Positions 1 through 28,479 of a stretch of 64,000 nt of DNA are shown one piece after another. Every line of letters begins with the position of its first letter. The first letter of the stretch is position 1. The stretch comes from Lytechinus pictus (lineage: Eukaryota): contig NC_087247.1 of the NCBI RefSeq assembly GCF_037042905.1, forward strand, positions 30,442,001 to 30,506,000, written 5' to 3'. Made by a program: the position numbers and the translations under genes. The notes beneath the pieces are model-generated. The model was not told the DNA's origin, did no database searches, and saw nothing but the letters and a program-made list of their open reading frames with translations.

Positions 1-1372
1 CGAAACAATCCTTTATAAATTTGATCGTATTGCTCAAAAATGTTACTGATTTTGTATACTTGTATTTCAGACTGAGATGGAAGCCGCAGAGAAGGCGCGA
101 CAAAAACAACACAAAATCCCCCTATACCAAGGCCACTGAAAATGATTATCCAAAGAAACCGACACTTGTTAATCACAAAAGGTAAATAAAGTTCAAAGAC
201 CTCTCTGCCAATCTCGGCAACAACATTGTAAAACCATTTCACTGAATAGAACAAAGCATTGGTCTTTGTCTTATTGTTGCTATCTTCCCGCAGGAAGTAA
301 TTCTCGTGAATCATAACGGCAGCAGGTATCCAGGTCATGGTCATCACAAAGTTGACCAGGATTGCACTTCCGGCAAAAACCGAGAAGCATCTCAGTGCAG
401 TGATTGTGCTGACGACTCCCGCAAACAGGGCGGATGACGTTGTGAGACTGGTGACGAACATGGTGGTCACTGCATGTTTCAACGTGTCAATGACAATTGG
501 TATCATGTCTTCACGGCTACCTCCTAGATGAAGTTTCTTCTTTGTGGCTTTCCAGATGTCAACGTAGACAAAGCAGTCATCAGCACCGACCCCGATGATG
601 AGAACAGCGGTTATGACGTTGATGAATGGGAAAAATGGCACTCTGTATACAATGTGATACAGGAAAAATGCTACGACCATTGACATAATTATACTGATAA
701 ACGTCATAATAGTAATAAAGAAAGAACCGACGTAAATCCATATAATAAAAATCACACAGACGCAACCGATGGCGATGAATAACGAATCAGCAATAGCAGC
801 CTTGTTGAATACGTCCAACTTAATCCCTGAACCTATTGCTATAATCTCAAGGAAGTTTCCTCTGAGTGATGATGTCCGCATGTGTGCTTCATAGAAGGTC
901 AGTGTCTCCTGACTGTCCCACCACAGAGGAGACAGGACGAGAGTCACTTCTAACTCGTGCCTGCTATTCATCACATCGTCTACAAAGCCACTTGGTGTTA
1001 AATAATGAAATATCGTATACACGCTTCCTAGATCTGTACAGTTGCTTGGAACATTCTGGCAAGTGGCGCCGACATCCAGGCATCCAGCTGTGTAGTACGC
1101 GACGCAACCTTGCAAAAGTGTCTTCGTGGTTTCCACGTCAATATCTTCGATCTCATCGCAGGAATCCTTTCCCACGATGACGGCTACAAGGTGCCCCAAT
1201 GACCATGTAGGACAACAGTCTCCCGATGAAGTGTAAACTCCACACGATTGGTTGAAGATATCCTGATTACGAAAGTTGGTGGCGTCATGTTCACACACAG
1301 CTTTCATGACGTCAGCCGTGAACATATTCGTTGAGCCATAGGATCGATACACCATTCGAAGACGATCAGAAA
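1..1372 (-). CDS. Dispatched-like paralog A, large terminal exon (ECD1, SSD TM2-6, TM7; partial)
   Basis: Acceptor tacag at 1373-1377; open frame SDRLRMVY...GVGADD...EQYDQIYKGLF, colinear with ORF 10570..13242. Confidence 0.93.
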
Positions 1373-3313
1373 CTGTATAGAGAAAATTAATACCAAGACT
1401 ATCTTATTCATAATGTAGGATATAACTATAACCTTACCTGATAGTATACGTTTTTTATATACCGTAGATAGTTCTTTGAAGAATCTTATGAAAATATTCC
1501 TCTTCCATTTATGGTTCCATGTAGAATCATAAAGGTTCTTTCACGAACCGTTTTCGGATGGTTACACAGCATATAGTTCGCAGTTAGATTCTTTGAGGAT
1601 TCTCTTGAGAGGACAAGATAAAGAATCATTTACTTGACACCTTAATGTCTTTAAATGCATTTAATTGGAAATTTCAAGCAGAAAGGGGGAAATCAACATT
1701 AGACTGCACTGAAAGCAATTCAGTGATATGTTTCCTCACAAGTTCCCCTTTTCCGATGTTTCCGTCTATAATTCCTGGCAACGTAACACTACTATACTGT
1801 TTGGCACTATGATGCATTTGATGTATGTTTACCATTATAAACTGTCTACTTGATATGCTTTCTAAAAAAGATGAAAGTTGATGATTGTGATTTGGAAATG
1901 TAAAACAGAGCGAGGTTTATAATGTCTACTCACGCTGGGTACTGCAGACTGCTGTTTCGTTGTGTAAATCTCTTTCTATACGGCTTCTTGGCGTCTCTGA
2001 AATACTGCGTCGACTGATGTTAGAATTGTCGTTCATCGGGTTTGGAAAGAATAACTGCGTTTCTTCTGTCAGCCGTCGAAATGCCCGGACACGCCCACTG
2101 ATAACTGTTCCACGAGCTTGAAATCCCTTTAAATGTGTAAAAAAAAATTGGTATAACTTTACAACGAATCATTATTAGCAAGACTTACAAACACCAGCTA
2201 ACCGACAATCTAAATACATCATTATCATACCCATGTCAAAGGATACCCAATGCATAGAAGTCATTATTATCATCATTATCACCACCACCTCCATCACCAT
2301 CATCATAAACATCCTTATCATTATCATCATGATCATCACCATTACCATCATCATCATTTAGCAGCACCACCTCCGTTGTACGTCATAACCATAACAGGTT
2401 ACTTTCATACGAATAACCATATACTCCAATCTTTATCCTTCATAATTCAAGAAGAATATAATACACATTAACGGTACTACTACTTACAAGTAATGTGACT
2501 CATTATGGGTGCAAATCGTAAATCATGCTTTTGTAACGTCTAAAATAAAGAGATAAGGTCGAACTTCATCACCCTCCATATTCTTGATCGGTGAGTGCCA
2601 GTTAATGAAATTTTTTATTTATCTTTAAATGTTTATATTTATGGCCTGTACCTGCGTAGGATCTTCGAATGAAAGCATAGGGCCGAGACAAAATCCAATG
2701 ACCCCCGTGGTAATGACGAACAGGAGAATGACAAGGAGTACGATGGACGGACATCGAACAAGGAATTCAGCATAGCTATACAAAAGACAAAATAAAGAAA
2801 TACATTTATATCGCCGAAAAAGCAGCCCGAATGTTGTTATCTATCAAGTGAACCTGAAATTTAAACAACCTGAAAATTAAATTTCTAAGGAAAAATTATT
2901 TGGATTGATATGATTTAATTCTTTAATAATAAACAAACTATTATTAAGACCCTTACTTATTTCATAAAGTGGTATTAATCTCCTATGCAATGATGACTTC
3001 TAAATAGCAGATGATTCTACTCGGCTAAACAAAATGATAATTCAATGTTTTTAGTGTTTTCATCCATAATTTCTGATTTTCCTATATGAAAATTAGAACA
3101 TTGAATTAATTTATATGATGTGGAAACAACATTTAATACGAACATAGCATAAACAAAAAAATGAACAATAATAATATTCAAGTAATTCACGTATTTCATT
3201 CACCTGTGCCAGCAACTAGTGAAGATTTCCATGACGTCACTTTCCTTCTTTCCAACCCAGCCTGTAAAATGTTGGCCTTTGCTGTTGTGTTTGATCTCTG
3301 TGGTAACTTTCAT
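1..3313 (-). CDS. DISP1: Dispatched-like RND/SSD protein, paralog A (spliced; 3' end runs off the window)
   Basis: Hand-spliced exons 3313-3204, 2775-2652, 2126-1934, 1372-<1 with GT/AG ends and compatible phases (2,0,1). The frame is open to base 1: MKVTTEIK...YAEFLVRCPSIVLL...LSFEDPTQ/GFQARGTVISGR...FFPFINVITAVLIIGVGADDCFVYVDIWK...LPSQSEIQVY. It is missing from the ORF track because it has no stop inside the window. The symbol denotes family similarity, not proven orthology. Confidence 0.93.
1934..2126 (-). CDS. Dispatched-like paralog A, ECD1 start exon
   Basis: GFQARGTVISGRVRAF...RIERDLHNETAVCSTQ; aag acceptor, gtgagt donor, 193 nt. Confidence 0.9.
2652..2775 (-). CDS. Dispatched-like paralog A, TM1 exon
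   Basis: YAEFLVRCPSIVLLVILLFVITTGVIGFCLGPMLSFEDPTQ; 124 nt, as in paralogs B and C. Confidence 0.9.
3204..3313 (-). CDS. Dispatched-like paralog A, first coding exon
   Basis: ATG at 3313 (MKVTT...CWHS), gtgaat donor in phase 2, acceptor ttccag before 3330. An upstream GAG|GTAAGT donor at 4078 would bring an in-frame stop, implying a 5'UTR exon. Confidence 0.7.
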
Positions 3314-4451
3314 GATTGTTCGGGTAAGATCTGGAACAATTGAATATCAAAATGAGCATGAGAATTTCAAACACTCATGATTTAGATTTATTATATTTTC
3401 ACTGCAAAGTTAAAGATTACATAAACAAAGAATTAACATGTTATCAAATTTTTGCCACATTCTGCAAATTCAGTATATGTCAAATGTATTTCCATTTATT
3501 TCTAATATACAAGGTTTTCATAAAGTATAGTTACAAAACTAACCACCTATGCTATGTTTATTTTTTTCGGTGCCATTAGTGACAGGTTCGTCAAACCAAA
3601 AATACCATAATCATTGAATTTCTGACACATAAAACAATTTCAATTTTCAAATCTTAATCTATTCATTTCCAGTCTTTTAAAGAAGTCGTGTTTTTGCCTA
3701 GTAACAGATCGTAAACTGTTATTTTTGTTTTGTATATATAATCCATTTACGGGAAATCTATAAAGATGAAGATTGTAAACGGAGAAATATCGGAATCTGT
3801 GAATAATCAAATGCATTTTATAAAGAATATGAAATCTTTTTATCAGATCAATCAAATCATTTGAGTGAAATGTGTTAAATTGTTGTTAGCGATTGTTTTC
3901 AGCAAATGTGATTCATCTGAAGCACAGGGGGGGGGGGGACAACACCTATGTACCCAGCTTCCTTTTCTCTGGCAATTATTCCAAAGTGTGTCTTATTCAG
4001 CATGTTCAGATTTGGTCAAAAACTCCAAACAAATGTCTTCAAAACTGAAAAGGAATGAGATGATGTAATTGACTTACCTCAAATTTTACACACAACATCG
4101 ATTAAAGCATTTTGCAGCTGGGTAGCGAAGTTATCCACCTAAGTAGAATTATTCCCATCACGGAAAATCAATCTCTGATATACGCTCCAAATCATTATGA
4201 TGCTTTTATGGGAGAGCTGATAGTCATTACTATTCAACATCCGAACTTTTCACTCCGGATTAAGCCGTTATATTGACCCAAGAACAACCATGACTACTAC
4301 ACATTACGTCACAAAAGTGTCTGTTGATCAATCCCTTAAACATGAGTGTTTTCTTTGACTTAAGCTGAATCTTTAATCACAGAGAAGGATGACTGTTGAT
4401 TTAAAAAATGGGCATGGAAAGTGATTTTTGTTTAAAGGGGGTATGGAGGGA

Positions 4452-4671
4452 GGCGCGATAGCTCAGTCGGTAGAGCGGGGGACTCGTATTCCGGTGACCC
4501 GGGTTCGATTCTCACTTGGTGCGCTAGTGCCCTTTGGTAAGGCATTAATCCTCAGTACCAGGTCCTTCGGAGAGGACCTTAAGCCGTCGGTCCTCTGGTT
4601 GCTTGCTTACAAGCATTCATGCTTTCTTAGCAATCAAGTAAAAAATCACCACCAATATTTCCAATAAGCTA
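4452..4671 (+). mobile_element. tRNA-derived SINE
   Basis: Pol III box A TAGCTCAGTCGG and box B GGTTCGATTCT, then gtgccctttggtaaggcattaatcc and gtccttcggagaggaccttaagccgtcggtcc, resembling conserved SINE central domains; the cloverleaf is imperfect. Confidence 0.8.
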
Positions 4672-4996
4672 NNNNNNNNNNNNNNNNNNNNNNNNNNNNN
4701 NNNNNNNNNNNNNNNNNNNNNNNNNNNNNNNNNNNNNNNNNNNNNNNNNNNNNNNNNNNNNNNNNNNNNNNNNNNNNNNNNNNNNNNNNNNNNNNNNNNN
4801 NNNNNNNNNNNNNNNNNNNNNNNNNNNNNNNNNNNNNNNNNNNNNNNNNNNNNNNNNNNNNNNNNNNNNNNNNNNNNNNNNNNNNNNNNNNNNNNNNNNN
4901 NNNNNNCGATGAGAGTGAGTTCCAATTCATTTTTTTATGAATTGTTTCATATTAAAGATTTAATATTTCATTCCATTCATTAAATTATCCCTGCTT

Positions 4997-5189
4997 CAGT
5001 GGCGTACCTAGTAATTTCCACAGGGGGGGGCAAATTCGTCCGCCAAAAAATTAGACAAGCAAAAAAAAAAAAAAAAAAAAAGGTCTTCAAGACTCGTCAG
5101 GGGGGGGGCAGGGATATGTCCCTTACATGGGTTCTGACTCGTCAGGGGGGGGGGGCACTCTGCCCCCCCCCCCCGTAGGTACGCTAGAG
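4997..5189 (+). mobile_element. hAT-type MITE (same family as 53204-53472, opposite orientation)
   Basis: Termini cagtggcgtacc...ggtacgctagag with internal ctcgtcaggggg repeats; reverse-complement similarity to 53204-53472. Confidence 0.75.
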
Positions 5190-5190
5190 G

Positions 5191-10461: not shown

Positions 10462-10569
10462 CACCCATCCAGCCTCACATATGCACGCACACTTATTTGG
10501 TTTTCATTAACTCGACAGAAGATAAGTGATACAGAAACATAATGATCAGTCATTAAATCATGGTTTCCA

Positions 10570-13208
10570 TTATTCAGCAGGTAACTTCTCATTTGGCAAG
10601 GAAATAACTGATACCCCAGCCACATCATCATCTAGAGAAACACCCTTCTGGACTTTCTTATCCGGGTCCCCACCCTCAAGAGGTGTGACACGAGGGTTTT
10701 GCCGACAACAAGATCGCGATAACTGGGCAAACATTCCCTCTGGTCCTATCGTTCGGCAAAGAGATACAAATAGGAATATTCCGTAAATCCAACTGATTGC
10801 CATGACAAGTGTCAGAAAAGTCCCAAGCTGTACGTAGCTAAGAACTGTGGCAGGTAGCATACACGCACCTGCTATGAAGGTACTGAAAGCAGCTAGAGTA
10901 ATGGCAGCACTAAGGGAACGAAGGGCGTACATTGATCGTGACTTCCGGTCAAATGCAGTTGATTGCCGATAGGCAACGCCTAAATGGATTGTAAAATCAA
11001 CCGACAGGCCCACAGCAAGGGACAAAACAATAGATTCAAATATATTTAGTTCCCATCCCATAAGAACAACGGAAGCAATGACTACGAAAACGGCACAAGC
11101 TATAGAGTAAATGGCATATAAAGTTACCAAAATGTTCCTTATGGCTAAGAGAAGAACACAAGCTGCGACTGCCAGAGAGACTCCGACCGAGAGAGGTGCA
11201 CCGGTCGCAAGGCCTCTTTGTAGATCAAAGAAAGACATCTGGTAATCACCGGCACTTATGAACCAACCTCTCTTTACACCTGTTGGAGCTGCAATTATTT
11301 GATCTTCAACCCAGCCGTTGAGATCCTCCCAGAATTGATTCATAGCGGTGAAATCCTGAGATTCTTCAACGTTTGTCTTTAAGTACATAATTAAGGCAAC
11401 AATTTCATTATCTGAATTGAATCTTAAACCAGGGGAACTCGATTCACATCCATAAAGTTCGCATTGTATTTCGGTGAAAGTAATTGAACATTGGCTAAAC
11501 AGATCGCTTGAATATGGAAATGAAGTATGATTGCAGCAAGGATTCAGATCATCGCCAGTTAAAGGATGTATGCAAGTGCCGTCTTCCATAAAGGTTCTAA
11601 AATCATCAATGAAACAAAATTCGTCTCCCGACTCCGCATCGTTGTCATGGAAACTTGAATTATTAAAGTCTATGCAGAAATTATACAACCATTGTTGTGC
11701 TTCTGATGGAGTTGGATCAAACGATTCATCCAACACTGTAAATCCTTCTCCATCAGCGTCCCAATGATTGCCATTGTCAACAGGTTCTACGCCCCAGACA
11801 ATAATTGCCGGCATCAACCTCGCTGAATCACCTTCAAAACTAAACAATCCTTTATAGATTTGATCGTATTGCTCAAAAATGTTACTTGTTCTGAATACTT
11901 GAAACTCCGATTGGGAAGGCAGGCGTAGCCTTAGTGCCACAAAAACAACACAGAAACCTCCGATTCCGAGCGCACTCAAGACGATTATCCAAAGGTAACG
12001 TAATTTAGTTATAAGATCCGGTAAATAATCTTCGAAAACTTTCCTCCCAATATTTGCAATTCGATCATAAAGTCGTCCGACTGCATACCAACAACCGCAA
12101 CATTCACAAGACGAATTTTCGCCCTCTTCCCATATAAAGTATTTCTCGTGTATCATAACTGCTGCTGGGATCCAAGTTAAAGTGAGGGCAAAGTTGACCA
12201 AAATTGCGCTTCCAGCAAAGACTGAGAAGCATCGCAGTGCAGTGATTGTGCTGACGACTCCTGCAAAAAGAGCAGCTGACGTCGTAAGGCTGGTGACGAA
12301 CATGGTTGTGGCGGCGTGCTTCAGAGTATCAAGAAGAATTGGAACAAGTTTTTCTTTCCCTTCACCTATCTTATTTTTGGTGGCCTTCCAGATGTCTACA
12401 TACACGAAACAATCGTCAGCCCCAACACCAATAATGAGAATTACAGTAATGACATTGATAAAGGGAAAGAATGGGATTCTATATATGACATGGTAAAGGA
12501 AAAAAGCTACTACCATCGACAAAATTATGCTGATCATCGTCATAACAGTAACAAATAAAGAACCAACGTAAACCCAGATTATTAATATTACGCAAACACA
12601 ACCGATAGCAATAAAAATTGAGTCCGAGAAGACGAACTTGTCAAATACGTTGAACTTGATACCAGCACCTATTGCTATGATCTCAAGATTGTTACTTTTC
12701 AATGACGATGTCCCCATGTGACTTTCATAGACGTTAAGTGTGTCTTCATGGTACGACCAAAGAGATGAAAGGACAAGCGCCACTTCCAAGTCATAGTTAT
12801 CATTCTCGACATTATCAGCAAACTCACTAGGTGTTAGATAATGAAGTATTTTGTGAATGTTTCCCAGATAAGTGCAATTAGAAGGGACATCCTGGCAGGT
12901 GGCGTCACTTTCAAGACACCCTGAAGTATAATACTGAATGCATTCGTGCAACAGGGTCTTTACTCTTTCCACGTCACTTTGGTTTATATCATCGCAGGAT
13001 TCCTTGCCGGCGATTAGGGCCACCGCGTATCCCAGGGTCCAGGTTGGACAGCAATCCCCTGCTGGGTCGTACAAGCCACATGATTGGTTGAAGATGTCCT
13101 GACTTCGAAAGTTGGTTGTGTCGTGTTGGCACACAGCCTTCATGACGTCAGCGGTGAACATGTCCGAAGAGCCAGACGATCGATACACCATCCGAAGACG
13201 ATACGATA
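10570..13208 (-). CDS. Dispatched-like paralog B, large terminal exon
   Basis: 890-aa ORF whose true start is the tttcag acceptor before 13208; 11 predicted TM segments and two Cys-rich loops. Confidence 0.95.
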
Positions 13209-15746
13209 CTGAAACGAATAAACGTTTGAAAGCAATTGTCATTTCATTAGCTCATTGTTTCACTTGCATCTAAAAGTTTACGAATGGGATATACCCACAA
13301 AAGACATTTATTATTTTTGTCATAATGAGTTATCAATCAGTTTTATCCATCAGTTTAAAGATCGTTACGATTTTCAATAATTTCCAATGATAGGCTATGT
13401 AGGCTCTGTTACAATGGTGATATGCCTTGACCCTTTCATGGTGGTAATTTATCCCCAATCCAGTGTTCATACCTGTTCTTTGGTGTTGAAGAAAACTGTT
13501 CATGAAACAAATAACTTGACATTTAAAAGCAATTTAGAATCCAAAATGGTGTTTCATAAAGCTGTTCGTAAGTTATGAATGACGTTACGCTTAAACTGGT
13601 GACTGTTCTTTTGTTAAATTATATATCACAATGTAGCTGACTTAGCACCTAAGAACATGTTCCAGTCGTGTGTAAAGTAGTGACTACTTTATGAAAAATT
13701 TTGCGAAAACCCTAACTGAAAATATGATTATGCTTATGGAAAATACTAACAATGTATAGTTGATGAGAATGTTTTGTACATACAGCCCTTGTCTAAGTAT
13801 GCCTAAGCTCAGACAGATATGTGAATATCTTTCGTATTTATCCAACTTTCCGTATTTAAGAACAGTCGGTCTTAACGTTCTTAAGTCACCAGCTTTGAGA
13901 ATATACAATACCCCTACTTATGCTAGGTATTAAGCAATTTCATATGGCGGTTGCTTCGTGTGAAAATAAAACCTGATTAAACCAATTAATCATTGTAACC
14001 TTGTTTATGATAATGTGATAATCTCCTACTCACGATAAGCACTGCATGTTTCAACGTAAAGGGTTGTATCATTGCCGGCATCCCTTTCGTCTCTGCGTCT
14101 CGGGATTTCTGGAATACTTCGGCGACTGACATTCGAACTCATTTCTGATGGATTAGGAAAGAATAACTGTGTTTCCGCTGTCATTCGCTCATAGGCTTTC
14201 AGCCGTCCGCTAATAACAGTTCCTCGTGCTTGAAACCCCTGTTTAAAATAAATTAAAAAAATAATGTTCACTTGTTCAGTAGAAAATTTTATATTTATTT
14301 TATTTTATTTTATTAAAACATCTTTCAACAGGATAAAACATTAATCAGCTCGCAAGTTTCTACTTTAATGACAAGATTAAGAAATTGCTAGAGAGTAATT
14401 CCTTATCCACAACCGTGACAAAGAAAATTAGTATTGGACTGTTGAACTACTAAAGGAAGTCCAAAATAAATGAAACATAAACAAAACAAGTTTAACAAGT
14501 GTCAAATTACTGATATTAGAATTTTATAGGCTCATTATAATAAATAATATATATGTGCTATTAAATACGCTCTTAAATTCATTTTATATACCTGATGAAG
14601 GTCTATCACCGAAAATTTGTACATCTTTTTTTTTACTACGAAATTAACCTTCGATGAATATTCATGAGTAGCCTATTCATAAATAAATGATTCTCAAATC
14701 ATATATCTTCCATGTCGTCAAATTACATTAATCACTTATAAAGCACTTATTAAAAGAAGTTTTATAATGATCATCAATAATGCTGGAAAATTTGTTATTT
14801 TTATCGGAATTATAGGGAATTAAAAAGCACGCACTATCTAAGGGCGATAGTCATAGTAGTGTTTTATTTCCGTAGGTATATGATTTAGTGCATCAGTAAT
14901 ACAATTGAAACCATTGAAATATTGAAAATAAAGCTACCTCTGTAGGATCGGAAAATGACGGTATTGGGCTGAAGAACACCGCCATAACTCCTGTAGCAAC
15001 GACGAATAACAAAACGAGTAGGAGAACGATGGAAGGAAATCTCACAAGGAAGCAAGCATATCTGCATAGGATGGAATAAAAAAAGAGTCATCAAGTGATT
15101 TTGATAAAATAGTTCCATTTACCATGTTTACTATCGTTAATAGCCGATTATGGCGATATACATGACAATATAGGAAGGCGTCAGATAAATGTCATTTTCT
15201 GTATTCTGTTTTGTTATTATTTTAAGGTATAATTATCATCTATATCATCTATGTTGAATGAATATCTTTATACAGAGACACAAGTGACTGCTTGGGTTTC
15301 CTTAATACATTTCATTCTTTTCATTACCAAAATTCTCTTACATATATATCACCCTAATTGGTACACTAATTCTTAAATTGATCTAACCTTAAGAATATTT
15401 CATGAGCCCGAGATACGCTACCCGTTATTTATCATCCTATGTATTTTTTATGAGATTTTTTGAGATTGTATAAAATGAAAAACTAATATAAGGTCGTTTA
15501 CTAATGTATATACTTATTTTAGATTATTTTAGAATATACTTTCTGATAGTAACACCATAGTTGTAAAGACCCATGCGATTCGTTCGTTTACCGATGCCAT
15601 AATCCAGTTGTTGTCTTCTGTGTTTCTTGTTCTCCTTTCTCTTTCTCCCAAAGGTTGTTTCTCGAAGCATTTTGGTTTTCGTCACCATCTGCATTGGTGT
15701 CCACTTTGGAGTCATCATCTGCACTGGTGTCCACTTTTGACTCCAT
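10570..15746 (-). CDS. DISP1: Dispatched-like RND/SSD protein, paralog B (~1040 aa, 4 coding exons)
   Basis: Exons 15746-15592, 15061-14938, 14238-14034, 13208-10570 total 3123 nt in frame. Motifs SFSDPTE/GFQARGT, TM4 GVGADD and TM10 LAVGLSVDF match the Dispatched family. Confidence 0.95.
14034..14238 (-). CDS. Dispatched-like paralog B, ECD1 start exon
   Basis: GFQARGTVISGRLKAY...PRRRDERDAG...CSAY; 205 nt, cag acceptor and gtgagt donor. Confidence 0.9.
14938..15061 (-). CDS. Dispatched-like paralog B, TM1 exon
   Basis: YACFLVRFPSIVLLLVLLFVVATGVMAVFFSPIPSFSDPTE; 124 nt. Confidence 0.9.
15592..15746 (-). CDS. Dispatched-like paralog B, first coding exon
   Basis: atcATGg start; MESKVDTSADDDSKVDTNADGD...GLWHR; phase-2 gtaaac donor; ends WH(R), like WH(S) in paralog A. 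Confidence 0.75.
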
Positions 15747-15812
15747 GATGATTAAGAAGCCCAAGACGGCGGCCTTGCTAGGTTTGTAAGAATGAATGGA
15801 AACAATTTACCT

Positions 15813-16143: not shown

Positions 16144-17654
16144 AAGTTTTAGGCAGGTTACTGAAAAAGCAATAGAATTTAACCACCACCTGCCTTATTG
16201 TCCCATTCACACGAATCACTGTTTTTGGGGCAGATGAACTTTCTTTATTGTTGCGGTGTTTTGTTCTGAATCATTCAAATGTGGCCATAATCGTGGTAAT
16301 TTCCGTATATAAGGTAAAAACTCCCACTTTCTAAAAACATGTGCCATAAAGTCAACGAAAACCCACTTCTTATACATTTCAGGAATTCCGTACATGGAAA
16401 AATATTTATGGCAAGTGGGGGTAAGTTTGTCCTCCTTAACCAGAGTTGGGGTCTCGTCCGAACATTATCACATTCTCTCACACACACACCCTCGCACACC
16501 GTACATCTACCTACACCAATCAGGGAATATCATATCCCTTTAATATTCATAATTCATATGTCTTCATTTCCAACAAAAAAATAATACAAATTCATTATAT
16601 AATTCACATGCAATAGCATAATTGAAAATTAACAGATTATTGATTATTAATAGATAAACAAAATTATCAATATACAAAATTATCGATTTACAAAGTGCCT
16701 ATTTGATATGAAATGTTATTGTGGGGAAATTTTAAATCAATCGATATCTGTAGTGGCGCACACATTTTTCACTCATTCATGTATGTCTTAGACAAATAAA
16801 TCTTTAAATAACTATATATAGACCTATCATCACGGCTAGCTACATGATTCAGCTAAGTCGTTAAGATACATGATCATGAAGATGGAATCCCATACTCGGC
16901 ATTTCCCAATCGAATAAAGGCATTCAAAAACGTCATTATTATAATATGAATGCAACTAACCTTTTGAGAAACAAGAATTTAATTTTGTTGCATCTTGGAG
17001 ATGAAATTTATCAGCAACACGCCATGTTTTTTTCAGTCTGTCTTCACCAGGAAAGCGTCGGACATAAATGCAAGCCTATTTCCGCTTGTACAGGTTTGAG
17101 AAGATACGTGAAAGTCGTGTTGGCCGGAGACCGGTACGTGGTTGTGTAACTGTTTGTCTTTTCTTGATGAAAAGGCTTATATATCGATCGATGTACTGTT
17201 TACGTCACCGCTACGAACATACACGCGGACAAACACTCGTTGTCTGCTCCCCAAATGTCATGCCAAATCAAGAGTGAAAGTGATGGCAATATCGATGTAT
17301 GTGAATTTTAAAACTTGGTGAAACCGAACCCCGGTGGCGTCACTGCTTTCAGGGTTGTATCTAGTTATGCGGAAAGCGCCGTTTACGGGGCAATTAAACG
17401 TTTATTATAGGAAATATGAAATAATTATCAAGTGCTTATTTTCAGCCTGCTTTTGTTGTGTAAATAGGCCTATAAACACAGGAGAGCCGGTGAGTTCCCC
17501 TTTTTAAAATTTGGGGTAATCTTTTACAAAACCTTCATTACTTGTATGAGACATTCTCCTAATTTGAAGCTTATGCTATTCAGCTATTTCTCTTTAACAT
17601 GTTCACGACAAAGGCTGCCTTCTAACATCACTATCCAAAAGATGATAAATGCAA

Positions 17655-17770: not shown

Positions 17771-17780
17771 CACACACACC

Positions 17781-17851: not shown

Positions 17852-17852
<1 letters not shown>

Positions 17853-20112: not shown

Positions 20113-22715
20113 TCAACGTTGTATCCTCTCATCACTCGTGTCAACGTGCTGTTCATGTACATATTCTCCTGGTTTCATTTCTTGAATATTCCCGCCCAAG
20201 TTAGATTGGCGCTTAAAACATGCTTTGGAGATCTGTGCAAAGGCTCCTTGTGGTCCGATGGTTCGGCAGAGGGACATGAAGAGGAAGAGTGCATACACCC
20301 AACTAACTCCCATGACGATCATGAGAAAGGTCCCCAGTTGGACATAAGATAGTACCGTCGCAGGCAACATGCATCCTCCTGCGCTAAAGGTGGTCAGTGC
20401 TGCGAGTGTGACAGCCGATCCAAGGGTTTTGAGGGCATGCATCGACCGAGCTTCTCTGTCTGGTTCCGTTGCTTGACGGTAAGCAACACCAAGGTGAACT
20501 GTGAAATCCACAGACAAACCGACAGCCAAGGAGAGAACCGTTGATTCAAATATGTTCAGTTCCCATCCCAACAGAACCACAGAGGCAATTACGACAAATA
20601 CTGCACATGCAATGGAATACACCGCGTAGATAGTCACTAAAACATTCCTGACGGTCAGCAACAGGACACAAGCTGAGAAGATCAGTGACATCCCTACGGA
20701 AAGAGGGGTTCCTGTAGCTAAACCTTGTTGGAGATCAAAGAACGCAAGTTGTAAGACAACATCACTTATGAACCATCCTCCGCGCAATCCAGAAGGAGCG
20801 TCAGCCATTTCATCATCTAGGAAGCGATTGACGTCATCCCAAAAGTCACCCATGGTATTATAGCTCAGTGAATACTTAACATTTGTTTTTATTAAAAGAG
20901 CCATTCCAACTATATCATCATCTGAATTAAACCATAACCCAGGTATGTAGCGTTCACAGCCACCCACAGACTGACACAGAACAAGGTAAAATATTGGCAC
21001 GCATTGACTGAAAAGAGAGGGTGAATATGGAAATGTTGTTTGATTACAACAAGGAGAAACGCCACCCGTGCAATCATTCTCCATGAAATCTTTGAATAGG
21101 TCAATGAAACAGAATTCGTCATACGCATTCGCCGTATTGTCATAAAAGCTTGAATTTCTGAGATCTTTACAGAAACTATAAAGCCACATTTGAGCTTCGG
21201 TGGATTTGACCTCAAAGTTCTTGTCAAGGACTGTGGATCCAAAAGAATCTGGATCCCAGTGATCCCCATTGTCTGCAGGTTCGACCCCCCAAACAAATAA
21301 TGCTCTCATTGTTTCTGAATTACTCTCAAAGCTGAAAATACCCTTGTAGACCTGATCATATTGTTCTAAAATATGACTTTTCCTAAACACTTGAAATTCA
21401 GATTGGGACGGGAGAGAGAGTTTTGGTGCGACAAACACCACGCAGAACCCACCAATTCCAAGACCACTCAAAAGAATAATCCACAGGATACGTAACTTAA
21501 CGATGACAATGGGCAAGTATTCCTCGAAAATCTTATTGCCAACTCTGCTGACACTGTCGTATATTCCCACCATGATGAACCACAAACGACAGCATCTGCA
21601 GGAAGACCCACCATGGACTTCTTCATCACAAGTGAAATATTTTTCATGAATCATGACAGTTGCCGGAATCCAGGTCACAGTGAAGACGAAATTAACCAGA
21701 ATGGAACAACCGGCAAAAACGGAAAAGCATCTGACTGCTGTGATGCTGCTGATGCAACCTGCAAAGAGGGCACTTGACGTTGTGAAACTTGTAACGAACA
21801 TGGTGGCGGCAGCGTGTTTCAGTGTCTTACGAACCACCAACACACGGTTGTTGCGATCCCCACCAAATTCCTTCTTAGTCAATTTCCAGATGTCGACATA
21901 CACGAAACAATCGTCGGCTCCTACACCGATCATCAGGACTGCTGTTACGACGTTTATAAAGGGAAAGAACACCAATCGAAAGACAGTATGATAGAAAAAA
22001 TATGCTACAACCATCGACATTATTATACTAATGAAGGTCATGATTGCAACAAAAAGCGAACCCACATACATCCAAATGATGACGAACACAACTAAGCACC
22101 CGATAGCAATATAAATCGTGTCTGAAAACAAGAAACCTGCAAATAAGCTTAATTTAAATCTTCCACCAATAGCGACGACCTGGACGGCATCATTGTTAAG
22201 TCGAGGTTCCTTGATATACCTCTCATACAAAGTCTCTGCATCGTATCCCTTTGTCAAAGGTTGAAGCACCACGACAGTTTGTAGATCAAAAACAACATTT
22301 TCTTCTAGTTGCAGGGCAAAGTTCTTGGGCGTGAGATAGTAGAATATGGTATGCACCCCAGAGTAAGATGTACAGTTTATAGGCACATCGTCGCAGCTCA
22401 TGCTGCTGCTGTCATCCACCAAACATCCTCTGGAGTAGTACCCCACGCATTCCTCCAGCAGCTTCTTCGTTCTGAGTACATCGTTCTCATCGATGTCTTG
22501 GCACGATTCTTTACCAACCATCAATGCCGTCACATGACCCAGTGACATCGAAGGGCAACAACTTCCGTTGTAGGTACGATAGGAGCAGGTCTCATTAAAG
22601 ACTGGGAGTCTGCGAAAGTTCTCTTCGTCACGTTGACACACCATCTTCATTCCTGAGGCGGTGAACATCTCCGTGGAGTCAGTAGATTGGTAAACAATCG
22701 GAAACCTAGATGAAA
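20113..22715 (-). CDS. Dispatched-like paralog C, large terminal exon
   Basis: 916-aa ORF whose true start is the catag acceptor before 22715; colinear with paralog B. Confidence 0.95.
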
Positions 22716-23609
22716 CTATGGAAGAGACAAAAAGAAAAGCAGCAGTTATAATATTGGCACCGGAACTTCCTAGCGGAACAAGATATTTTGGAGGCCTATG
22801 TTTTGTGATATATAACAATGGTTCACCCCCAAACTTCGTCTCCTCAGAGCGTTCAGGTGCCAATGTCGAGAAAGAGGTTATGCATCGATGTGGTTATGAT
22901 GGGAAGTAACAAATCCAGCTCCCAGTATAAATTCTACATAATATTTACTCTGTACTGCATTTATTATAAATTCTAGATCTATTTTATCCCTTTTAAGCCT
23001 AAGCACTTCAATATCTAGACAATATAGTTTTGATGATGCCGTCCATAATGTTATTAAAAAGATTAACTTTAAATAATTTATAAAGAAATCAGTCATTTTC
23101 TCTCTCTCTATACAGTGCGTATCAAAAAAAAGTTTACACTTTGAAAAAGCCCTGGAAATTAAAAAATGTTCAACATGTGGGTATTTTTTTCACATATAAT
23201 CTTGGGTTTGGGTCTCATCTATCCAATGAAAGTAAAAGTTTTGACAGAATGTTACACTTGAGTGAGCACTGTCCATTTTTCTAAAGCTCGCAAAAATCTG
23301 CGCAGAAATGCTCGTTTTCACGCTGTGTCAAGGGGTAAGGGCGAAATCAAACTTACCCTGCGAAAAATTTCCCTTGCACTTTTAGTCAATTGAAATAAAA
23401 CGGATACATTCAAGCATTTTGTAACAATTTTGCCACCCAAACTGAAATTTCAACACTTAGTAAGCACAACATTTACCCTTTTTGTGCCAGCTGGATCTGA
23501 GGACATAACTGAATCTGAACAAAAGTTTATATCAGACATCTCCAGCATTTTTTTACTAAGTTTTTGTCTCACCTGCATAGCAGAGTGAGACTATAGGCGC
23601 CGCTTTTCC

Positions 23610-23640
<31 letters not shown>

Positions 23641-26600
23641 GCGGCGGCGTCAACACCAAATCTTAACCTGAGGTTAAGTTTTTGAAATGACAGCATAACT
23701 TAGAAAGTATATGGACCTAGTTCATGAAACTTGGCCATAAGGTTAATCAAGTATTACTGAACATCCTGCCTGAGTTTCATGTCACATGACCAAGGTCAAA
23801 GGTCATTTAGGGTCAATGAACTTAGACCATGTTGGGGGAATCAACATCAAAATCTTAACCTAAGGTTAAGTTTTTGAAATGTCATCATAACTTAGAAAAT
23901 ATATGGACCTAGTTCATGAAACTTATACATAAGGTTAATCAAGTATCAATGAACATCCTGCTTGAGTTTCACATCACATGACCAAGGTCAAAGGTCATTT
24001 AGGGTCAATGAACTTTGGCCGAATTGGGGGTATCTGTTGAATTACCATCATAACTTTGAAAGTTTATGGATCTGATTCATAAAACTTGGACATAATAGTA
24101 ATCAAGTATTACTGAACATCCTGTGCAAGTTTCAGGTCACATGATAAAGGTCAAAGGTCATTTAGGGTCAATGAACTTTGGCCAAATTGGGGTATTTGTT
24201 GAATTACAGCCATAAATTTGAAAGTGTGTTGGTCTAGTTCATAAAACTTGGACATAATAGTAATCAAGTATCACTGAACATCCTGTGCAAGTTTCAGGTC
24301 ACATGATCAAGGTCAAAGGTCATGTTAAGGTCAAAGAACTTTGGCCACGTTGGGGGTATTTGTTGAATTGCCATCATATCTCTATAAGTGTATTGGTCTA
24401 GTTCATAAAACGTGGAAATAAGAGTAACCAAGTATCACTGAACATCTTGTGCGAGTTATAGTAGTTTTCAAAATCAGCACTGCTGCTATATTGAATCGCG
24501 TGATGCAGGTGAGACGGCCAGAGGCATTCCACTTGTTATCATTTAAAGTGGGTTTACATTTCATTTTTCATTTAATACTTGTTTCCTCACACCTTTTCCA
24601 AGCTTGGCAATGATTAACAGAATGAAAATCCAGCCTAAGCCATTTTATGTAATTCACAGCTCAGTGTAAAGCAAATATCGTCACAATGACCTTGGTGTGT
24701 GGGGGAGTGGGTTGAGGCGCAATGCACTCTTCGAAGTGTTTTGGGCGAGGAAACAAGTTTAAAAAGGTAAAAGATATCTTCAAATCAATTTTACTAGCTA
24801 AATTTAACGTGTTATTCATGAATAAGGTCTACTTTTATTCGCATAACTATTTCAGAGTTCTGCGAAAATAATTTTCACTAACTTTTCAAAAAAAAGTGGT
24901 GCTCACTCAAGCGGAAATATTTTTTCGACAGTAATATCGTCATTTGCTTAAATGGATCTGTACCAATGTTAAAATTTGGAAAAATCTTCAGGATATTACA
25001 AATGTATAATTTGACAGGAATTTTTCTAAGTGTAAACTTTTTTTTGATACGCACTGTATATACATTATTTCCTTATAATCTATTCAAGTGGGAGAGGGCA
25101 TAGTATCGAGTCTTGTCGACTAACATACTCCTTTTTCGACTTTTCCTTGCGAAAAGGGAGATCGCTTTTAACCCTTTCACTCTTTTAGTTGTCATAAAAT
25201 ATTTGAACCACCCCCCCCCCCCTCTGTCCCGACGAGTTTTACAGGTACACCACTGGCCTTGTTGTATTTGAGAGGGTGGGTTTCTAACTTTAAAAAATAT
25301 CTTCTTACGATCAAGGCTGCATTGACCATCAGGTCCATCACTATCCAGAGTTAGGTTGGACCAAACATCGGTGTCTCGACTTTGACGATCAAGAACACCA
25401 GGGGTCTGAGAACACGATGAGTGGTTGGATATAGATGGGCATGAGTAGATATCATCATCACCGTTACTATGATAGTACATTCTTCCCAAAGCTTTCAATC
25501 TACCGCTGATGGCTGTTCCCCTTGCTTCAAATCCCTGAAAAGGAGTGAAATCAATTGCATGAAAAGAGATCAATATACCCTCTTGTCATAATTATATCAT
25601 TTCTTTCTGGACTGTTTTTTTTTTCAAAAGCCTCATATAATTCATAATTTTGCTAAAATGAATATGAAAAAAATGTAACTTTTTCACAACATCTGGCTGT
25701 TTGATAGGTCTCGAGTTCAAGGCCACATAACACAAAGCTTATAGGCCTACTTCAGTCACGCAGGTGAAACCGACCACAGACCGATAACAAATTATTTTGT
25801 TATTTCCAATGGCATACCATCGGTCGATCCGGAGTCGGTTTCAATAGTGCGACTCCAGCGTTAGCGACTTATCGCACTATTGTTTTCTCGCGTTTGATTG
25901 CACATTGTTATCATTACACCGATCATGCATGTTGTTCCGCGATCAGTTACTAAACTTGGTGTAATCAGACAGCACTATATTTATGTTGTTGTTGTTTTTG
26001 TTTTAGCTTATACGGCGCGTATCATTCAGTAGTGAAAATTTGCGCCAAATTATTTATCAACTCTGGGAGACAGTCGTGCGTAAAGTCGTTTATGACATCC
26101 ATGGCAACTGATTAAATAGTGGATAAAAAAAAATGTTTCAAGCAAGATTTTTTTTATCACTAAATCTTTAAAACCCAAGGATATAATATCTCACCGATGT
26201 TGGATCATTAAAAGAAGGGAAATCGTTGAGGATGAATCCAAGAACGGCTGAGATGACGACCACCACGAGAACGAGTAACAAGACCACGGATGGATAGGAG
26301 ACTAAGAATTGAGAATACCTGAAATTTGCCAAGAAGATGATTCAAGCGTAGTTACCGTAACATAATAGAATGGATAGTTTGCTGCAAAATAAGAGAGATT
26401 ATTAATATATATCAACATGATGGAGGTCTATTTAGGATTCAGGATGATGATTCAATATTATGTCAAGTCGACTTGATACCGTTATTTTGGCGATTTATAA
26501 ACGTTTTAGCGAACATGGTGACAAACACATCGCCATGGTGAAATATATCATCTCATGTAACTACGTCATTAAAACTTACTGGATAACCAAAGTATATTAA

Positions 26601-27608
26601 TACCATTGACTCTTGTTTATAATGTTCAAGCTGGAAATAAGGTTTGATTACTTTGGAACTTCTTCCGTTTATCCGTGTATGTTTTATTCATTATTATTGC
26701 CTTCAAATTGAAATTGAACTATAAATCGCCTTCATTTCAGTCAGCTAATGGATAACCGTTTGGTTAAATCAAGACAATTTTCCATATAAAACCATTTCCT
26801 TATCATCTAACAAACGCAACTTTACCATTACACTTCGGAAAAATGCAGAGATTCTATAAAAACTTGTTTGTTAATACTGTCAATAAGATTATAATATTAA
26901 GCAGCAGTGGAAATTTTTCGTTTATTGTTGTTTCCATAATTTATCATGATTAGATTTGTTTTCCATGAAAGGGAATATCAAGTTTCATGCCCTTGGTAGC
27001 AAACCTCATTTTGTTAATCATCATTTATTCAGTGTTTCTTATCAGCTAATCATGTTAAATTATTAATATTGGACCTCTAGTTTACGTCTGCTGGTACCAT
27101 GCCTCCGGGAAAACTAAATGTGTTTTTTTTCTTCGATGTGTTGATTGTCTAGTTTTCCAGCGTTTGATTTAAAAAACTTACAGCTATTGTTTCACAGGGA
27201 AGAGTTAGCTTTATAAATTTGATAAACATCTGTATATCTGTGTAGGATCACGTAGTAAACTTTCATTTTTGTATCAAAAACTGAAAAACAATCAGTAGTA
27301 GCTCCATCAATATAGCAGTAGTTACTAGCAGTAGCATCAATCACATATCACCACCACCAGCATCATTATTACCACCGTTGTCATTTTCATCACTATAATC
27401 ATATACTACAATCATCATCATCATCGTCGTTGTCATCATCATTATCTAACCTATTTGCGATAGAGCCAAACATTCCACCAGCTTCCTCTGCGACCAATAT
27501 TTCTCTATCTGGTGGGACATCATTGTCAGGTTGGTGATCATTTCGTACATCGACGGCAGAATTATTTTGACTAGCTCCATTATCGCCTGGTGAAGGGCCA
27601 ACCTTCAT
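20113..27608 (-). CDS. DISP1: Dispatched-like RND/SSD protein, paralog C (~1036 aa, 4 coding exons)
   Basis: Exons 27608-27451, 26318-26195, 25534-25309, 22715-20113 total 3111 nt in frame. Motifs FNDPTS/GFEARGTAISGRL, GVGADD and GLSVDF present. Confidence 0.94.
23113..25056. mobile_element. Tc1/mariner-type non-autonomous element in a paralog C intron
   Basis: TA|cagtgcgtatcaaaaaaaagtttacactt ... aagtgtaaacttttttttgatacgcactg|TA; no transposase ORF. Confidence 0.88.
23561..24537 (+). mobile_element. Helentron-associated (HINE/DINE-1/pearl-like) element, copy 1, nested in the Tc1/mariner MITE
   Basis: T-run ends without a TSD; 13-bp subterminal IR gtctcacctgcat/atgcaggtgagac; 5' hairpin; (GGC/GAC)n microsatellite; four 160-190-bp internal repeats plus a partial fifth. 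Confidence 0.85.
25309..25534 (-). CDS. Dispatched-like paralog C, ECD1 start exon
   Basis: GFEARGTAISGRLKAL...DRQSRDT...QCSLD; 226 nt, tttcag acceptor and gtaag donor. Confidence 0.9.
26195..26318 (-). CDS. Dispatched-like paralog C, TM1 exon
   Basis: YSQFLVSYPSVVLLLVLVVVVISAVLGFILNDFPSFNDPTS; 124 nt. Confidence 0.9.
27451..27608 (-). CDS. Dispatched-like paralog C, first coding exon
   Basis: MKVGPSPG...FGSIANR; phase-2 gttaga donor; acceptor before 27652; the upstream donor at 27974 is preceded by an in-frame TAA. Starts MKV like paralog A. Confidence 0.7.
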
Positions 27609-27689
27609 AACGAAATTTGTGGGTGGCCTTTCTTCTGTAATAACGATACCACCTATAAACGAAGGGATAAACAATATTTATTTGAAATC

Positions 27690-27848
27690 CATCACCATCA
27701 TCTTCATCATCACCACCAACACTACTATCACCACCACCAGCATCATCATCACTGTCGTCATAATCATTACTATAATCATCATCATCATAATCATCCTCGT
27801 CATCAATATCATCATCATCATCACCACCACCACCACCATCATCACCAG
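27690..27848. repeat. (CAT/CAC)n microsatellite
   Basis: Directly visible; similar tracts at 2260-2360 and 27340-27445. Confidence 0.9.
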
Positions 27849-28479
27849 GAAGATACTTCGAACCTCAGACTTCATGCTTCAAAGTCACCATCAGATTCAC
27901 ATGGAATCCACGATATATGTCATTCCAACAAATGTAATGGAATGTGTTGAACATTCGGACTACTAGTATTTACCTTAAAAGTGGTTCAGCAAAATATAAA
28001 ACTGCTTCGTTCGTCCTGAAATATGTCGAAAGAAATGACATTCTTCGGGGGAAATATTAAGAAAAATTATCATCTATGAGTCAAGAAGAGAAATTAGGTG
28101 AGGGGTGAATGTCGCTCTCTATCTTTTTGAAAACTGAATGAATAAAGTCACCGGCAGTTGCATTTGTACCATTTCATTCCTTCTGTTCCAACACTTTCAA
28201 TTTAGTTGATGTGAGAGACAAAATGAGCCTAGACTTTGCACTAGCAGCAACACGGTTTATTATCGATCGTTTGTTAATAATATAACTCTCCAATAAATTC
28301 CCAATTCTATTATGATAATGTGGCAAGCTGTGAACCGTAAAATGTACAAGAATAGTTGGTAATGGATGGACAAAAATAGACTTGTCATTGCATTCTTGTG
28401 TCAGAAATAAAAAGATAAAGTACAGGGGTGAAATTATCTTGAAGGAAAAGGATGATTTTAGTTCAATCCCATCTTAAAT

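What the first reader, a model, noticed from the sequence alone, without database searches (positions are those of the whole stretch)
1..27974. Tandem array of at least three intact, diverged Dispatched paralogs
Seen: three head-to-tail DISP1-like genes with identical intron phases (2,0,1), identical 124-nt TM1 exons, no stops or frameshifts, clearly diverged ectodomains and no visible intron similarity. The array may continue beyond the left edge. Known: Dispatched is the RND-family exporter of lipidated Hedgehog, and most invertebrate bilaterians have one hh gene served by one disp gene. Inference: an old, selectively retained lineage-specific expansion, suggesting sub-functionalised release or new cargo (other cholesterol/lipid-modified proteins, sterols or small molecules). 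This is the best candidate for an undescribed system in the window.
Basis: partly seen in the sequence, partly recalled or inferred. Interest (0 to 1): 0.8.

Follow-up and report, generated by a model that had tools for sequence, protein, structure and literature searches.

The report
Three extra Dispatched-like genes in tandem
A sea urchin chromosome carries three intact, selectively maintained copies of a Dispatched-like membrane transporter in a row. They are not the animal's true Dispatched gene but belong to an echinoderm-only side branch of the family whose cargo is unknown.

Summary
Three head-to-tail Dispatched-like genes lie on the minus strand: g1 at 1-3313 (its 3' end is 1.2 kb left of the window), g2 at 10573-17068, and g3 at 20116-27652 plus an upstream exon at 36782-36968. 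All three share four coding exons, a 124-nt TM1 exon, intron phases 2,0,1, GT-AG introns and no stops. The N gap at 4672-4906 lies between the g1 start codon and the g2 stop codon, outside any coding sequence.

The window is Lytechinus pictus. The genome has eight Dispatched-family genes and one hedgehog gene. The true Disp1 ortholog is on another chromosome. The array belongs to an echinoderm-only Disp-like clade and has exactly three genes. It is also present in L. variegatus and, at least as a g3-like/g2-like pair, in S. purpuratus.

- dN/dS between the two Lytechinus species is 0.19-0.26 for all three genes.
- A spliced g2 transcript is assembled in an RNA-like run.
- All Na+-site residues of DISP1, the ectodomain cysteines and the DISP1 fold (TM 0.8) are retained. 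ECD1 and the linker are strongly diverged.
- g1 and g2 show two gene-conversion tracts.

Verdict: these are real, old, retained paralogs already auto-annotated as "dispatched homolog 1-like". Their cargo (Hedgehog or another lipid) is untested. Interest is moderate.

The parts
1..1372 (-). g1 last (large) coding exon, cut by the window's left edge. It continues 1162 bp to G000:C3:30440839.
   Evidence: Open frame 3-1403. The acceptor AG precedes 1372. The full exon is read in L002. Pfam finds SSD/Patched.
1934..2126 (-). g1 linker exon (193 nt; phase 0 to 1), encoding GFQARGT...RSRIERD.
2652..2775 (-). g1 TM1 exon, 124 nt (phase 2 to 0).
3204..3313 (-). g1 first coding exon, with the ATG at 3313.
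   Evidence: It is 86% identical to the N-terminus of the L. variegatus ortholog P0003.
4672..4906 (.). Assembly gap in the g1 upstream / g2 downstream intergenic region. It is not in any coding sequence.
10573..13208 (-). g2 large last coding exon (2636 nt), with stop TAA at 10570-10572.
   Evidence: It matches DISP1 structure chains at E 7e-191.
14034..14238 (-). g2 linker exon (205 nt), encoding GFQARGT...PRRRDERD.
14938..15061 (-). g2 TM1 exon, 124 nt.
   Evidence: The splice joint 15061/15592 is seen in contigs of runs X1 and X15.
15592..15777 (-). g2 exon holding 31 nt of 5'UTR and the first 155 nt of coding sequence (ATG at 15746).
16961..17068 (-). g2 non-coding first exon. This is its minimum extent.
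   Evidence: The joint 15777/16961 (GT..AG on the minus strand) is seen in the 3406-nt contig of run X1.
20116..22715 (-). g3 large last coding exon (2600 nt), with stop TGA at 20113-20115.
   Evidence: It is 100% identical to L. pictus protein P0012.
25309..25534 (-). g3 linker exon (226 nt).
26195..26318 (-). g3 TM1 exon, 124 nt.
27451..27652 (-). g3 exon holding the likely start codon (ATG at 27608; MKVGPSP...).
36782..36968 (-). g3 upstream exon. It is coding in the annotated isoform X1 (P0012) but is more likely 5'UTR. It is joined over a 9129-nt intron that contains a (TCA)n satellite and two N gaps.

Best explanation
The locus is a conserved three-gene tandem array of Dispatched-like transporters in Lytechinus pictus. 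The genes are not the Hedgehog-pathway Dispatched itself, which sits on another chromosome. They are one echinoid branch of an echinoderm-only Disp-like subfamily with seven extra genes in this genome.

Shown:
- Each gene encodes a complete 12-TM RND / sterol-sensing-domain protein with the DISP1 fold.
- Every residue that coordinates the three transmembrane Na+ ions in mouse DISP1 is retained, as is the ectodomain disulfide scaffold.
- A short disordered linker, encoded by its own small exon, carries a minimal R-x-x-R motif.
- The genes are under purifying selection, and g2 is transcribed and spliced.

Inferred:
- They work as DISP1 does, using the Na+ gradient to extract a lipid or a lipid-anchored ligand from the outer leaflet of the plasma membrane into the ectodomain cleft and hand it to an acceptor.
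- The strongly diverged ECD1 and linker set a cargo or tissue specificity different from that of canonical Disp.
- The genome has one hedgehog/Hog gene but eight Disp-family genes, and canonical Disp is conserved one-to-one. I therefore think a non-Hedgehog lipidic cargo (a sterol or another lipid-modified protein) is somewhat more likely than partitioned Hedgehog release.

The array evolves by divergence plus occasional gene conversion between g1 and g2.
For: Family and fold:
- Pfam finds SSD, Patched and MMPL domains in all three genes.
- phmmer against the PDB gives DISP1 at E 7e-191 over 826 of 878 residues. PTCH1, NPC1 and NPC1L1 score only 3e-11 to 3e-7.
- The AF2 model of g3 has pLDDT 81 and pTM 0.79. 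Its best PDB matches are mouse DISP1 7rph/7rpk, with TM 0.79-0.81 by query and 0.88 by target. NPC1 and PTCH1 give about 0.5.

Not the canonical gene:
- The C7 locus (P0026) is 44-51% identical to vertebrate DISP1 and has single orthologs in S. purpuratus, Diadema and asteroids.
- Trees put g1-g3 in a 100/100 echinoid clade inside an echinoderm-only clade. Clade members were named.
- The genome holds eight loci, all with open large exons.

Retention:
- The same three-gene array is present in L. variegatus.
- S. purpuratus has a g3-like gene followed 9 kb downstream by a g2-like gene.
- dN/dS between L. pictus and L. variegatus is 0.21-0.26 (g1), 0.20-0.25 (g2) and 0.19-0.24 (g3), at dS of about 0.1.

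Expression: a 3406-nt contig at depth 46 in run X1 is spliced exactly at the predicted g2 introns. The word share of 0.58-0.59 matches the exonic fraction of 0.60.

Transport core: the positions equivalent to D571, D572, T610, S611, T613, T614, D1049, T1087 and T1088 are all kept. The one change is T1087 to S in g1 and g2. The residue list comes from bioRxiv 10.1101/2020.09.05.284026.

Ectodomains: 15 of 16 conserved ectodomain cysteines are kept (9 of 10 in ECD1, 6 of 6 in ECD2). ECD1 is only 26% identical to the genome's own canonical Disp, against about 50% for the TM bundles.

Cargo argument: there is one HH_signal locus and one Hint locus in the genome.

Gene conversion: g1-g2 dS falls to 0.5-0.8 (g2 aa ~591-740) and 0.2 (aa ~876-985), against a background of 1.4-2.7.
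Against: - No functional or localisation data exist, and the cargo is inferred only by exclusion.
- Expression evidence is solid for g2 only. g3 has only low-depth contigs (4-6) over its 3' coding sequence, and one run also shows intergenic or intronic signal. g1 has only a 0.09-0.11 word share against an exonic fraction of 0.53.
- Two raw RNA-seq runs (about 6% of each sampled) had no reads on the g2 or g3 exons. Expression is therefore restricted or low.
- The R-x-x-R motifs are minimal rather than canonical furin sites. The canonical echinoderm Disp has no aligned motif, so this feature is weak evidence.
- Retention of the DISP1 ectodomain scaffold is equally compatible with Hedgehog still being the cargo.
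- Deep branching is unresolved. The subfamily could be an echinoderm-stem duplicate of Disp or an older paralog lost elsewhere.
Confidence: 0.6

Rival explanations
1. Sub-functionalised Hedgehog exporters. g1-g3 still release the single lipidated Hedgehog ligand, but in different tissues, stages or membrane domains, or to different acceptors, sharing the work with canonical Disp.
For: The DISP1 fold, the pincer-like two-ectodomain scaffold with its cysteines, the separate linker exon with an R-x-x-R motif, and the full Na+ site set are all kept. The best structural match by query TM-score is the ShhN-bound DISP1 (7rpk). hh lies on the same chromosome, though 30 Mb away.
Against: - Canonical Disp is retained one-to-one in all echinoderms sampled and is far closer to vertebrate DISP1 (ECD1 42% identical, against 26% for g2).
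- Eight transporters for one ligand is hard to explain.
- The long acidic linker arm that embraces ShhN in DISP1 is much shortened.
- Array proteins evolve about 2.6 times faster than canonical Disp over the same Lytechinus-Strongylocentrotus split (path lengths 0.34 against 0.13).
Confidence: 0.27
2. Decaying or functionless duplicates: young pseudogenes that merely have not yet acquired stops.
For: Expression evidence is weak for g1 and g3 and absent in two RNA-seq runs. Protein evolution is faster than in canonical Disp.
Against: - All three genes are intact in two species, and two of them also in S. purpuratus.
- dN/dS is 0.19-0.26.
- Synonymous divergence between copies is saturated (dS above 1.4), so they have stayed open for a very long time.
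- All catalytic residues are kept.
- A spliced g2 mRNA exists.
Confidence: 0.03
3. Assembly artefact: haplotigs or collapsed and expanded duplicates of a single gene.
For: The region contains an assembly gap, and sea urchin genomes are highly heterozygous.
Against: The copies are only 58-75% identical in protein, and their introns are unalignable. The same three-gene order is present in an independent assembly of another species. Each copy has its own ortholog in the tree.
Confidence: 0.01

Closest known systems
Vertebrate DISP1 (mouse and human Dispatched-1; PDB 7rph, 7rpk, 6xe6)
   Same: - The 12-TM RND fold with two ectodomains (TM-score 0.8-0.88).
- The sterol-sensing domain.
- The GxxxDD motif in TM4 and the Asp in TM10, plus all Thr/Ser Na+ ligands.
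- The ectodomain cysteine scaffold.
- A TM1 exon, a small linker exon and one giant last exon.
- 35-37% identity in the Foldseek structure alignments.
   Different: - Not orthologous; the urchin ortholog is the C7 gene.
- Much shorter (1015-1040 aa against about 1500), with almost no cytosolic tails.
- The linker arm is short and carries only a minimal R-x-x-R motif instead of RERR.
- ECD1 is only about 26% identical.
- Hedgehog release has not been shown.
Canonical echinoderm Disp (L. pictus C7 locus, P0026; S. purpuratus P0063)
   Same: Same genome, same family, same exon plan for the linker and large exons, and the same Na+ site residues.
   Different: - About 38-40% identical overall.
- The canonical gene is single-copy, is conserved one-to-one across echinoderm classes, and is closer to mammalian DISP1 than to g1-g3.
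- The array genes evolve about 2.6 times faster.
Other lineage-specific Disp/CHE-14 family expansions (annelid Disp-like proteins, PMC9695228; C. elegans CHE-14 and PTR genes, from general knowledge)
   Same: Extra Dispatched-family members beside one canonical Disp. They are presumed to have Hedgehog-independent lipid or apical secretion roles.
   Different: The echinoderm clade contains only echinoderm sequences among the best 150 cluster representatives of the 1.84-billion-protein library. No annelid or nematode member grouped with it. Whether it is related to the annelid 'sister of Disp1/2' clade was not tested with annelid paralog sequences.
PTCH1 / NPC1 / NPC1L1
   Same: The RND-type SSD transmembrane core.
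   Different: Only SSD-level similarity (E 3e-11 to 3e-7; TM-score about 0.5). The ectodomains differ.

Membership tests
Dispatched family (DISP1-type RND/SSD transporters) | 12-TM RND fold with two large extracellular domains, between TM1-TM2 and TM7-TM8. | tested here: met
   phmmer aligns 826 of 878 residues of the g2 large exon to DISP1 chain 6xe6 at E 7e-191. The AF2 model of g3 matches 7rph/7rpk at TM 0.79-0.81 by query and 0.88 by target.
Dispatched family (DISP1-type RND/SSD transporters) | Sterol-sensing domain in TM2-6. | tested here: met
   PF12349 and PF02460 score above their gathering thresholds in g1, g2 and g3.
Dispatched family (DISP1-type RND/SSD transporters) | Intramembrane acidic triad (mouse D571, D572, D1049) and the Thr/Ser Na+ ligands (T610, S611, T613, T614, T1087, T1088). 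| tested here: met
   All nine positions are conserved in g1-g3. The only change is T1087 to S in g1 and g2. The residue list comes from the paper read.
Dispatched family (DISP1-type RND/SSD transporters) | Furin-cleavable linker in the TM1-TM2 loop, encoded by a small separate exon. | tested here: inconclusive
   The separate linker exon is present in all three genes. It is predicted to be disordered (pLDDT below 50 at residues 130-163 of g3) and carries a minimal R-x-x-R motif: g1 RIER, g2 RDER, g3 RQSR. The R positions are kept in the L. variegatus orthologs. These are not canonical R-X-K/R-R sites, and cleavage was not tested.
Dispatched family (DISP1-type RND/SSD transporters) | Releases lipid-modified Hedgehog from producing cells. 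| not testable with these tools
   This needs a cell-based release assay or genetics.
Canonical DISP1 orthogroup | One-to-one orthology with vertebrate DISP1/DISP2 and fly Disp. | tested here: not met
   The C7 locus is the ortholog. g1-g3 fall in a separate echinoderm-only clade, with support 99 SH-aLRT, 96 and 91/96.
DISP3 / PTCHD2 | Orthology with vertebrate DISP3. | not tested
   No DISP3 sequence was included in the trees. Indirectly, the nearest non-echinoderm relatives of g2 are canonical Disp proteins at 38-40% identity.
Patched / NPC1 | Full-length similarity, including the ectodomains. | tested here: not met
   Only the SSD region aligns, at E 3e-11 to 3e-7. TM-scores are about 0.5.

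The most novel reading that the evidence does not exclude
The echinoderm-only Disp-like subfamily, including this array, is a set of Na+-driven exporters for a cargo other than Hedgehog. The cargo could be a sterol, another membrane lipid or a different lipid-anchored signalling protein. That would be a Hedgehog-independent branch of Dispatched function that arose in the echinoderm stem and then radiated to seven genes in sea urchins.
Probability: 0.4. Interest if true: 0.65.

Novelty: new member of a known kind. Interest (0 to 1): 0.42.

Why it matters
Dispatched is usually treated as a single-copy, Hedgehog-dedicated exporter in invertebrates. This sea urchin has one hedgehog gene and eight Dispatched-family genes. 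Seven of them form an echinoderm-only clade that has kept the full Na+-coupled transport core for hundreds of millions of years while remodelling the cargo-binding ectodomain.

L. pictus is a genetically tractable urchin. The array therefore offers a direct way to ask whether Dispatched-type transporters have cargoes other than Hedgehog. That question is also raised by reports that DISP1 handles cholesterol (PMC8403983, title and abstract seen).

The finding is an uncharacterised gene family expansion, not a new kind of system. The genes are already auto-annotated.

Tried and rejected
- Continuation of the array to the left was rejected. A whole-genome six-frame search finds only three copies on C3, plus two on C13 in tandem, one on C7 and two on C2.
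- g1-g3 as the Hedgehog-pathway Disp was rejected.
- Dating the origin of the subfamily failed. The careful tree leaves the deep nodes open, and the AU test does not reject monophyly of all echinoderm Disp and Disp-like sequences (difference in lnL 0.13, p-AU 0.51). An echinoderm-stem duplication is compatible with the data but not proven.
- The order of the g3 / (g1,g2) split relative to the Diadema paralogs is unresolved.
- Raw-read RNA-seq runs X19 and X20 gave zero reads on the g2 and g3 exons, with only about 6% of each run read. This is uninformative about other tissues.
- Word-share evidence for g1 expression is weak, at 0.09-0.11.
- dS between g3 and g1 or g2 is saturated, so no dN/dS could be computed for those pairs.
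- Five literature searches found no description of an echinoderm Dispatched expansion. The 2006 sea urchin Hedgehog-pathway genomics paper that I recall is not in the searchable library, so prior mention there cannot be excluded.
- The annotated 78-aa N-terminal extension of g3 (exon 36782-36968) is unlike g1 and g2 and looks like a 5'UTR open frame. I treat ATG 27608 as the likely start, but this is not proven.
- No complex prediction with Hedgehog was run, because no binding claim is made.
- I did not use another genome to look across the N gap.

Full report
**What is in the sequence**

The first 28 kb of the window hold three large open exons on the minus strand: 3-1403 (cut by the left edge), 10573-13251 and 20116-22893. 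All three hit the sterol-sensing, Patched and MMPL Pfam models. The middle one matches DISP1 structure chains at E 7e-191. Drosophila Disp scores 4e-117, and PTCH1, NPC1 and NPC1L1 score only 3e-11 to 3e-7.

I mapped annotated homologs onto the window and read the junctions by eye. This gives three complete gene models with the same plan:
- a short first coding exon;
- a 124-nt exon encoding TM1;
- a small linker exon of 193, 205 or 226 nt;
- one giant last exon of about 2.6 kb.

Intron phases are 2, 0, 1 in all three genes. All 11 introns are GT-AG, and there is no stop or frameshift. The proteins are 1015 aa (g1, completed from L002 because its last 1162 nt lie left of the window), 1040 aa (g2) and 1036 aa (g3, counted from ATG 27608).

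No similarity between copies is found in introns or spacers by blastn. Two points need adding: the genes are on the minus strand, and the 124-nt exons are equal in length only.

**The assembly gap**

The gap at 4672-4906 lies between the g1 start codon (3313) and the g2 stop codon (10570-10572). No Disp-like coding fragment lies in 3314-10572. The g2 transcript contig does not reach the gap. No reading frame depends on continuity across it. I did not try to establish that continuity.

**Which organism, and how many copies**

The g3 protein is 100% identical to the L. pictus protein P0012, so the window is Lytechinus pictus. It is contig C3 at 30.44-30.51 Mb of G000. A six-frame search of the whole genome finds eight Disp-like large exons, none with a stop:
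- the three in this array;
- two in tandem on C13;
- one on C7;
- two on C2.

Nothing further lies to the left of g1, so the array has exactly three members. The genome has a single HH_signal locus and a single Hint/Hog locus, at C3 60.03-60.05 Mb, 30 Mb from the array.

**Which copy is the real Dispatched**

The C7 gene (P0026) is 44-51% identical to vertebrate DISP1. It has single close orthologs in S. purpuratus, Diadema, three asteroids and amphioxus. The array genes are only 38-40% identical to canonical Disp proteins.

I built three trees: quick LG+G4 with 57 rows, FastTree with 181 rows including the best cluster representatives of a 1.84-billion-protein library, and careful IQ-TREE with 51 rows. 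In all three, g1-g3 fall in a 100%-supported echinoid-only clade. That clade sits inside a larger clade whose named members are all echinoderms: echinoids, holothurians, ophiuroids and asteroids, with two Antedon crinoid proteins as sister in the FastTree.

Other placements:
- g3 groups with two S. purpuratus genes (100/100).
- g1 and g2 group together with two unnamed echinoid sequences (100/100).
- Vertebrate DISP1 and DISP2, fly, mollusc, annelid and hemichordate Disp and the canonical echinoderm Disp lie outside.

The deep nodes are not resolved in the careful tree. An AU test does not reject monophyly of all echinoderm Disp plus Disp-like sequences (p 0.51). An echinoderm-stem duplication of Disp is therefore compatible with the data but not proven.

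The 124-nt TM1 exon and its phases also occur in the C2a and C13a paralogs. The shared gene structure is therefore ancestral to the family in this genome.

**Age and retention**

L. variegatus has the same three genes in the same order. In S. purpuratus, the g3-like gene P0007 is followed 9 kb downstream, in the same orientation, by a gene whose TM1 exon is 88% identical to that of g2. A second g3-like gene, P0009, stands alone.

Over the large exon, dN/dS between L. pictus and L. variegatus is 0.21-0.26 (g1), 0.20-0.25 (g2) and 0.19-0.24 (g3), at dS of about 0.1.

Between g1 and g2, dS is 1.4-2.7 over most of the gene. It drops to 0.5-0.8 at g2 residues ~591-740 and to 0.2 at ~876-985, with third-position identity up to 0.93. 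I read these as two gene-conversion tracts that predate the split of the two Lytechinus species. dS between g3 and the other two is saturated.

Array proteins evolve about 2.6 times faster than canonical Disp across the Lytechinus-Strongylocentrotus split (path lengths 0.34 against 0.13).

**Expression**

Four RNA-like contig runs of the same organism hold 0.58-0.59 of the words of the g2 span. The exonic fraction of that span is 0.60.

I laid runs on 14930-20929:
- Run X1 has a 3406-nt contig at depth 46, with no mismatches, that skips exactly 15062-15591 and 15778-16960. This confirms intron 1 of the coding region and reveals a non-coding first exon at 16961-17068.
- The g3 3' coding sequence is covered only by short contigs at depth 4-6. 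Run X15 also shows low-depth intronic and intergenic signal.
- Two raw RNA-seq runs had no reads on these exons in the roughly 6% of reads sampled.

The g1 word share is only 0.09-0.11. So g2 transcription is shown. g3 is supported only weakly here, and I presume the NCBI isoform model rests on transcript data, which I did not check. g1 remains open.

**Functional anatomy**

The DISP1 cryo-EM study lists the three Na+ sites (D571, D572, D1049; T613/T614, T1087/T1088, T610/S611) and the furin site RERR 276-279 in a linker encoded by one small exon.
- All nine Na+-site positions are conserved in g1-g3, and in nearly all the other urchin paralogs. The only change is T1087 to S in g1 and g2.
- Nine of ten ECD1 cysteines and six of six ECD2 cysteines conserved in vertebrate DISP1 are kept.
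- The linker exon is present but encodes a much shorter arm. Each gene has a minimal R-x-x-R motif followed by Asp: RIER, RDER and RQSR. The Arg positions are kept in L. variegatus. This is suggestive only.
- Against the genome's own canonical Disp, the TM bundles are about 50% identical, ECD2 38% and ECD1 26%. Canonical urchin Disp is closer to a mammalian DISP1 (ECD1 42%) than to g2.
- An AlphaFold2 model of g3 (pLDDT 81, pTM 0.79) matches mouse DISP1 at TM 0.79-0.81 by query and 0.88 by target.

**Interpretation**

What is shown: three real, old, intact, constrained Dispatched-family paralogs in a conserved tandem array. They are distinct from the canonical Disp and have an intact Na+-coupled transport core.

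What is inferred: they act as DISP1 does, extracting a lipidic or lipid-anchored cargo from the outer leaflet, with specificity set by the diverged ECD1 and linker.

Whether the cargo is still Hedgehog is open. Three points lean towards a non-Hedgehog cargo:
- There is one hh/Hog locus but eight transporters.
- Canonical Disp is strictly conserved one-to-one.
- ECD1 is strongly remodelled and the linker arm shortened.

Nothing here tests the question. Decay and assembly artefact are excluded.

**Novelty**

The genes are auto-annotated as 'protein dispatched homolog 1-like' in L. pictus, L. variegatus and S. purpuratus. Five full-text searches found no paper describing an echinoderm Dispatched expansion. 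A paper on annelids reports comparable extra Disp/CHE-14 proteins and states that invertebrates have one form in the Disp1/2 clade (PMC9695228).

This is therefore a new, uncharacterised branch of a known family, of moderate interest. The same scan has an unchecked note (s1-320045) about a Dispatched gene next to an HHIP-like gene elsewhere in this genome. I did not examine it.

Noticed in passing
window 45562-47820 (-): A 752-aa open frame, rich in Ser/Arg/Asn/Thr and disordered-looking, with no Pfam hit. It lies in a GC-richer stretch (44-54 kb) and is probably a large exon of an unrelated gene.
   Followed up: partly
window 32419-36303: A satellite of about 3.9 kb derived from (TCA)n, with higher-order units of 189-195 and 393 nt and extreme GC skew (-0.7 to -0.9). 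One N gap (33996-34141) interrupts it and a second (36306-36533) follows directly after it. It lies inside the 9.1-kb 5' intron of g3.
   Followed up: no
window 60047-62115: Two copies of a composite tandem repeat with 193-nt and 163-nt units, at 60047-60853 and 61308-62115.
   Followed up: no
window ~15730-16330: An interspersed repeat in the g2 5'UTR intron. It has very high depth (thousands) in RNA-like contig runs, and reads in both orientations in the raw RNA-seq runs.
   Followed up: no
g1/g2 large exons (g2 residues ~591-740 and ~876-985; window ~11.3-11.7 kb and ~10.7-11.0 kb in g2): Two tracts where synonymous divergence between g1 and g2 drops from above 1.4 to 0.5-0.8 and to 0.2. 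This indicates past gene conversion between the tandem neighbours.
   Followed up: partly
L009:2741-6058 (L. variegatus, between the g3 and g2 orthologs): A 1106-aa open frame, probably a transposon. The L. pictus spacer has no counterpart of that size.
   Followed up: no
G000:C13:15.647-15.667 Mb (L004, L005): A second tandem pair of Disp-like genes in the same genome. It belongs to a different echinoid subclade.
   Followed up: partly
L013 (S. purpuratus AAGJ06000017.1:6717261-6747389): The second g3-like S. purpuratus gene (P0009) is solitary. It is flanked by a zf-C3H1 gene and an MFS transporter gene, so the array's composition differs between urchin lineages.
   Followed up: no
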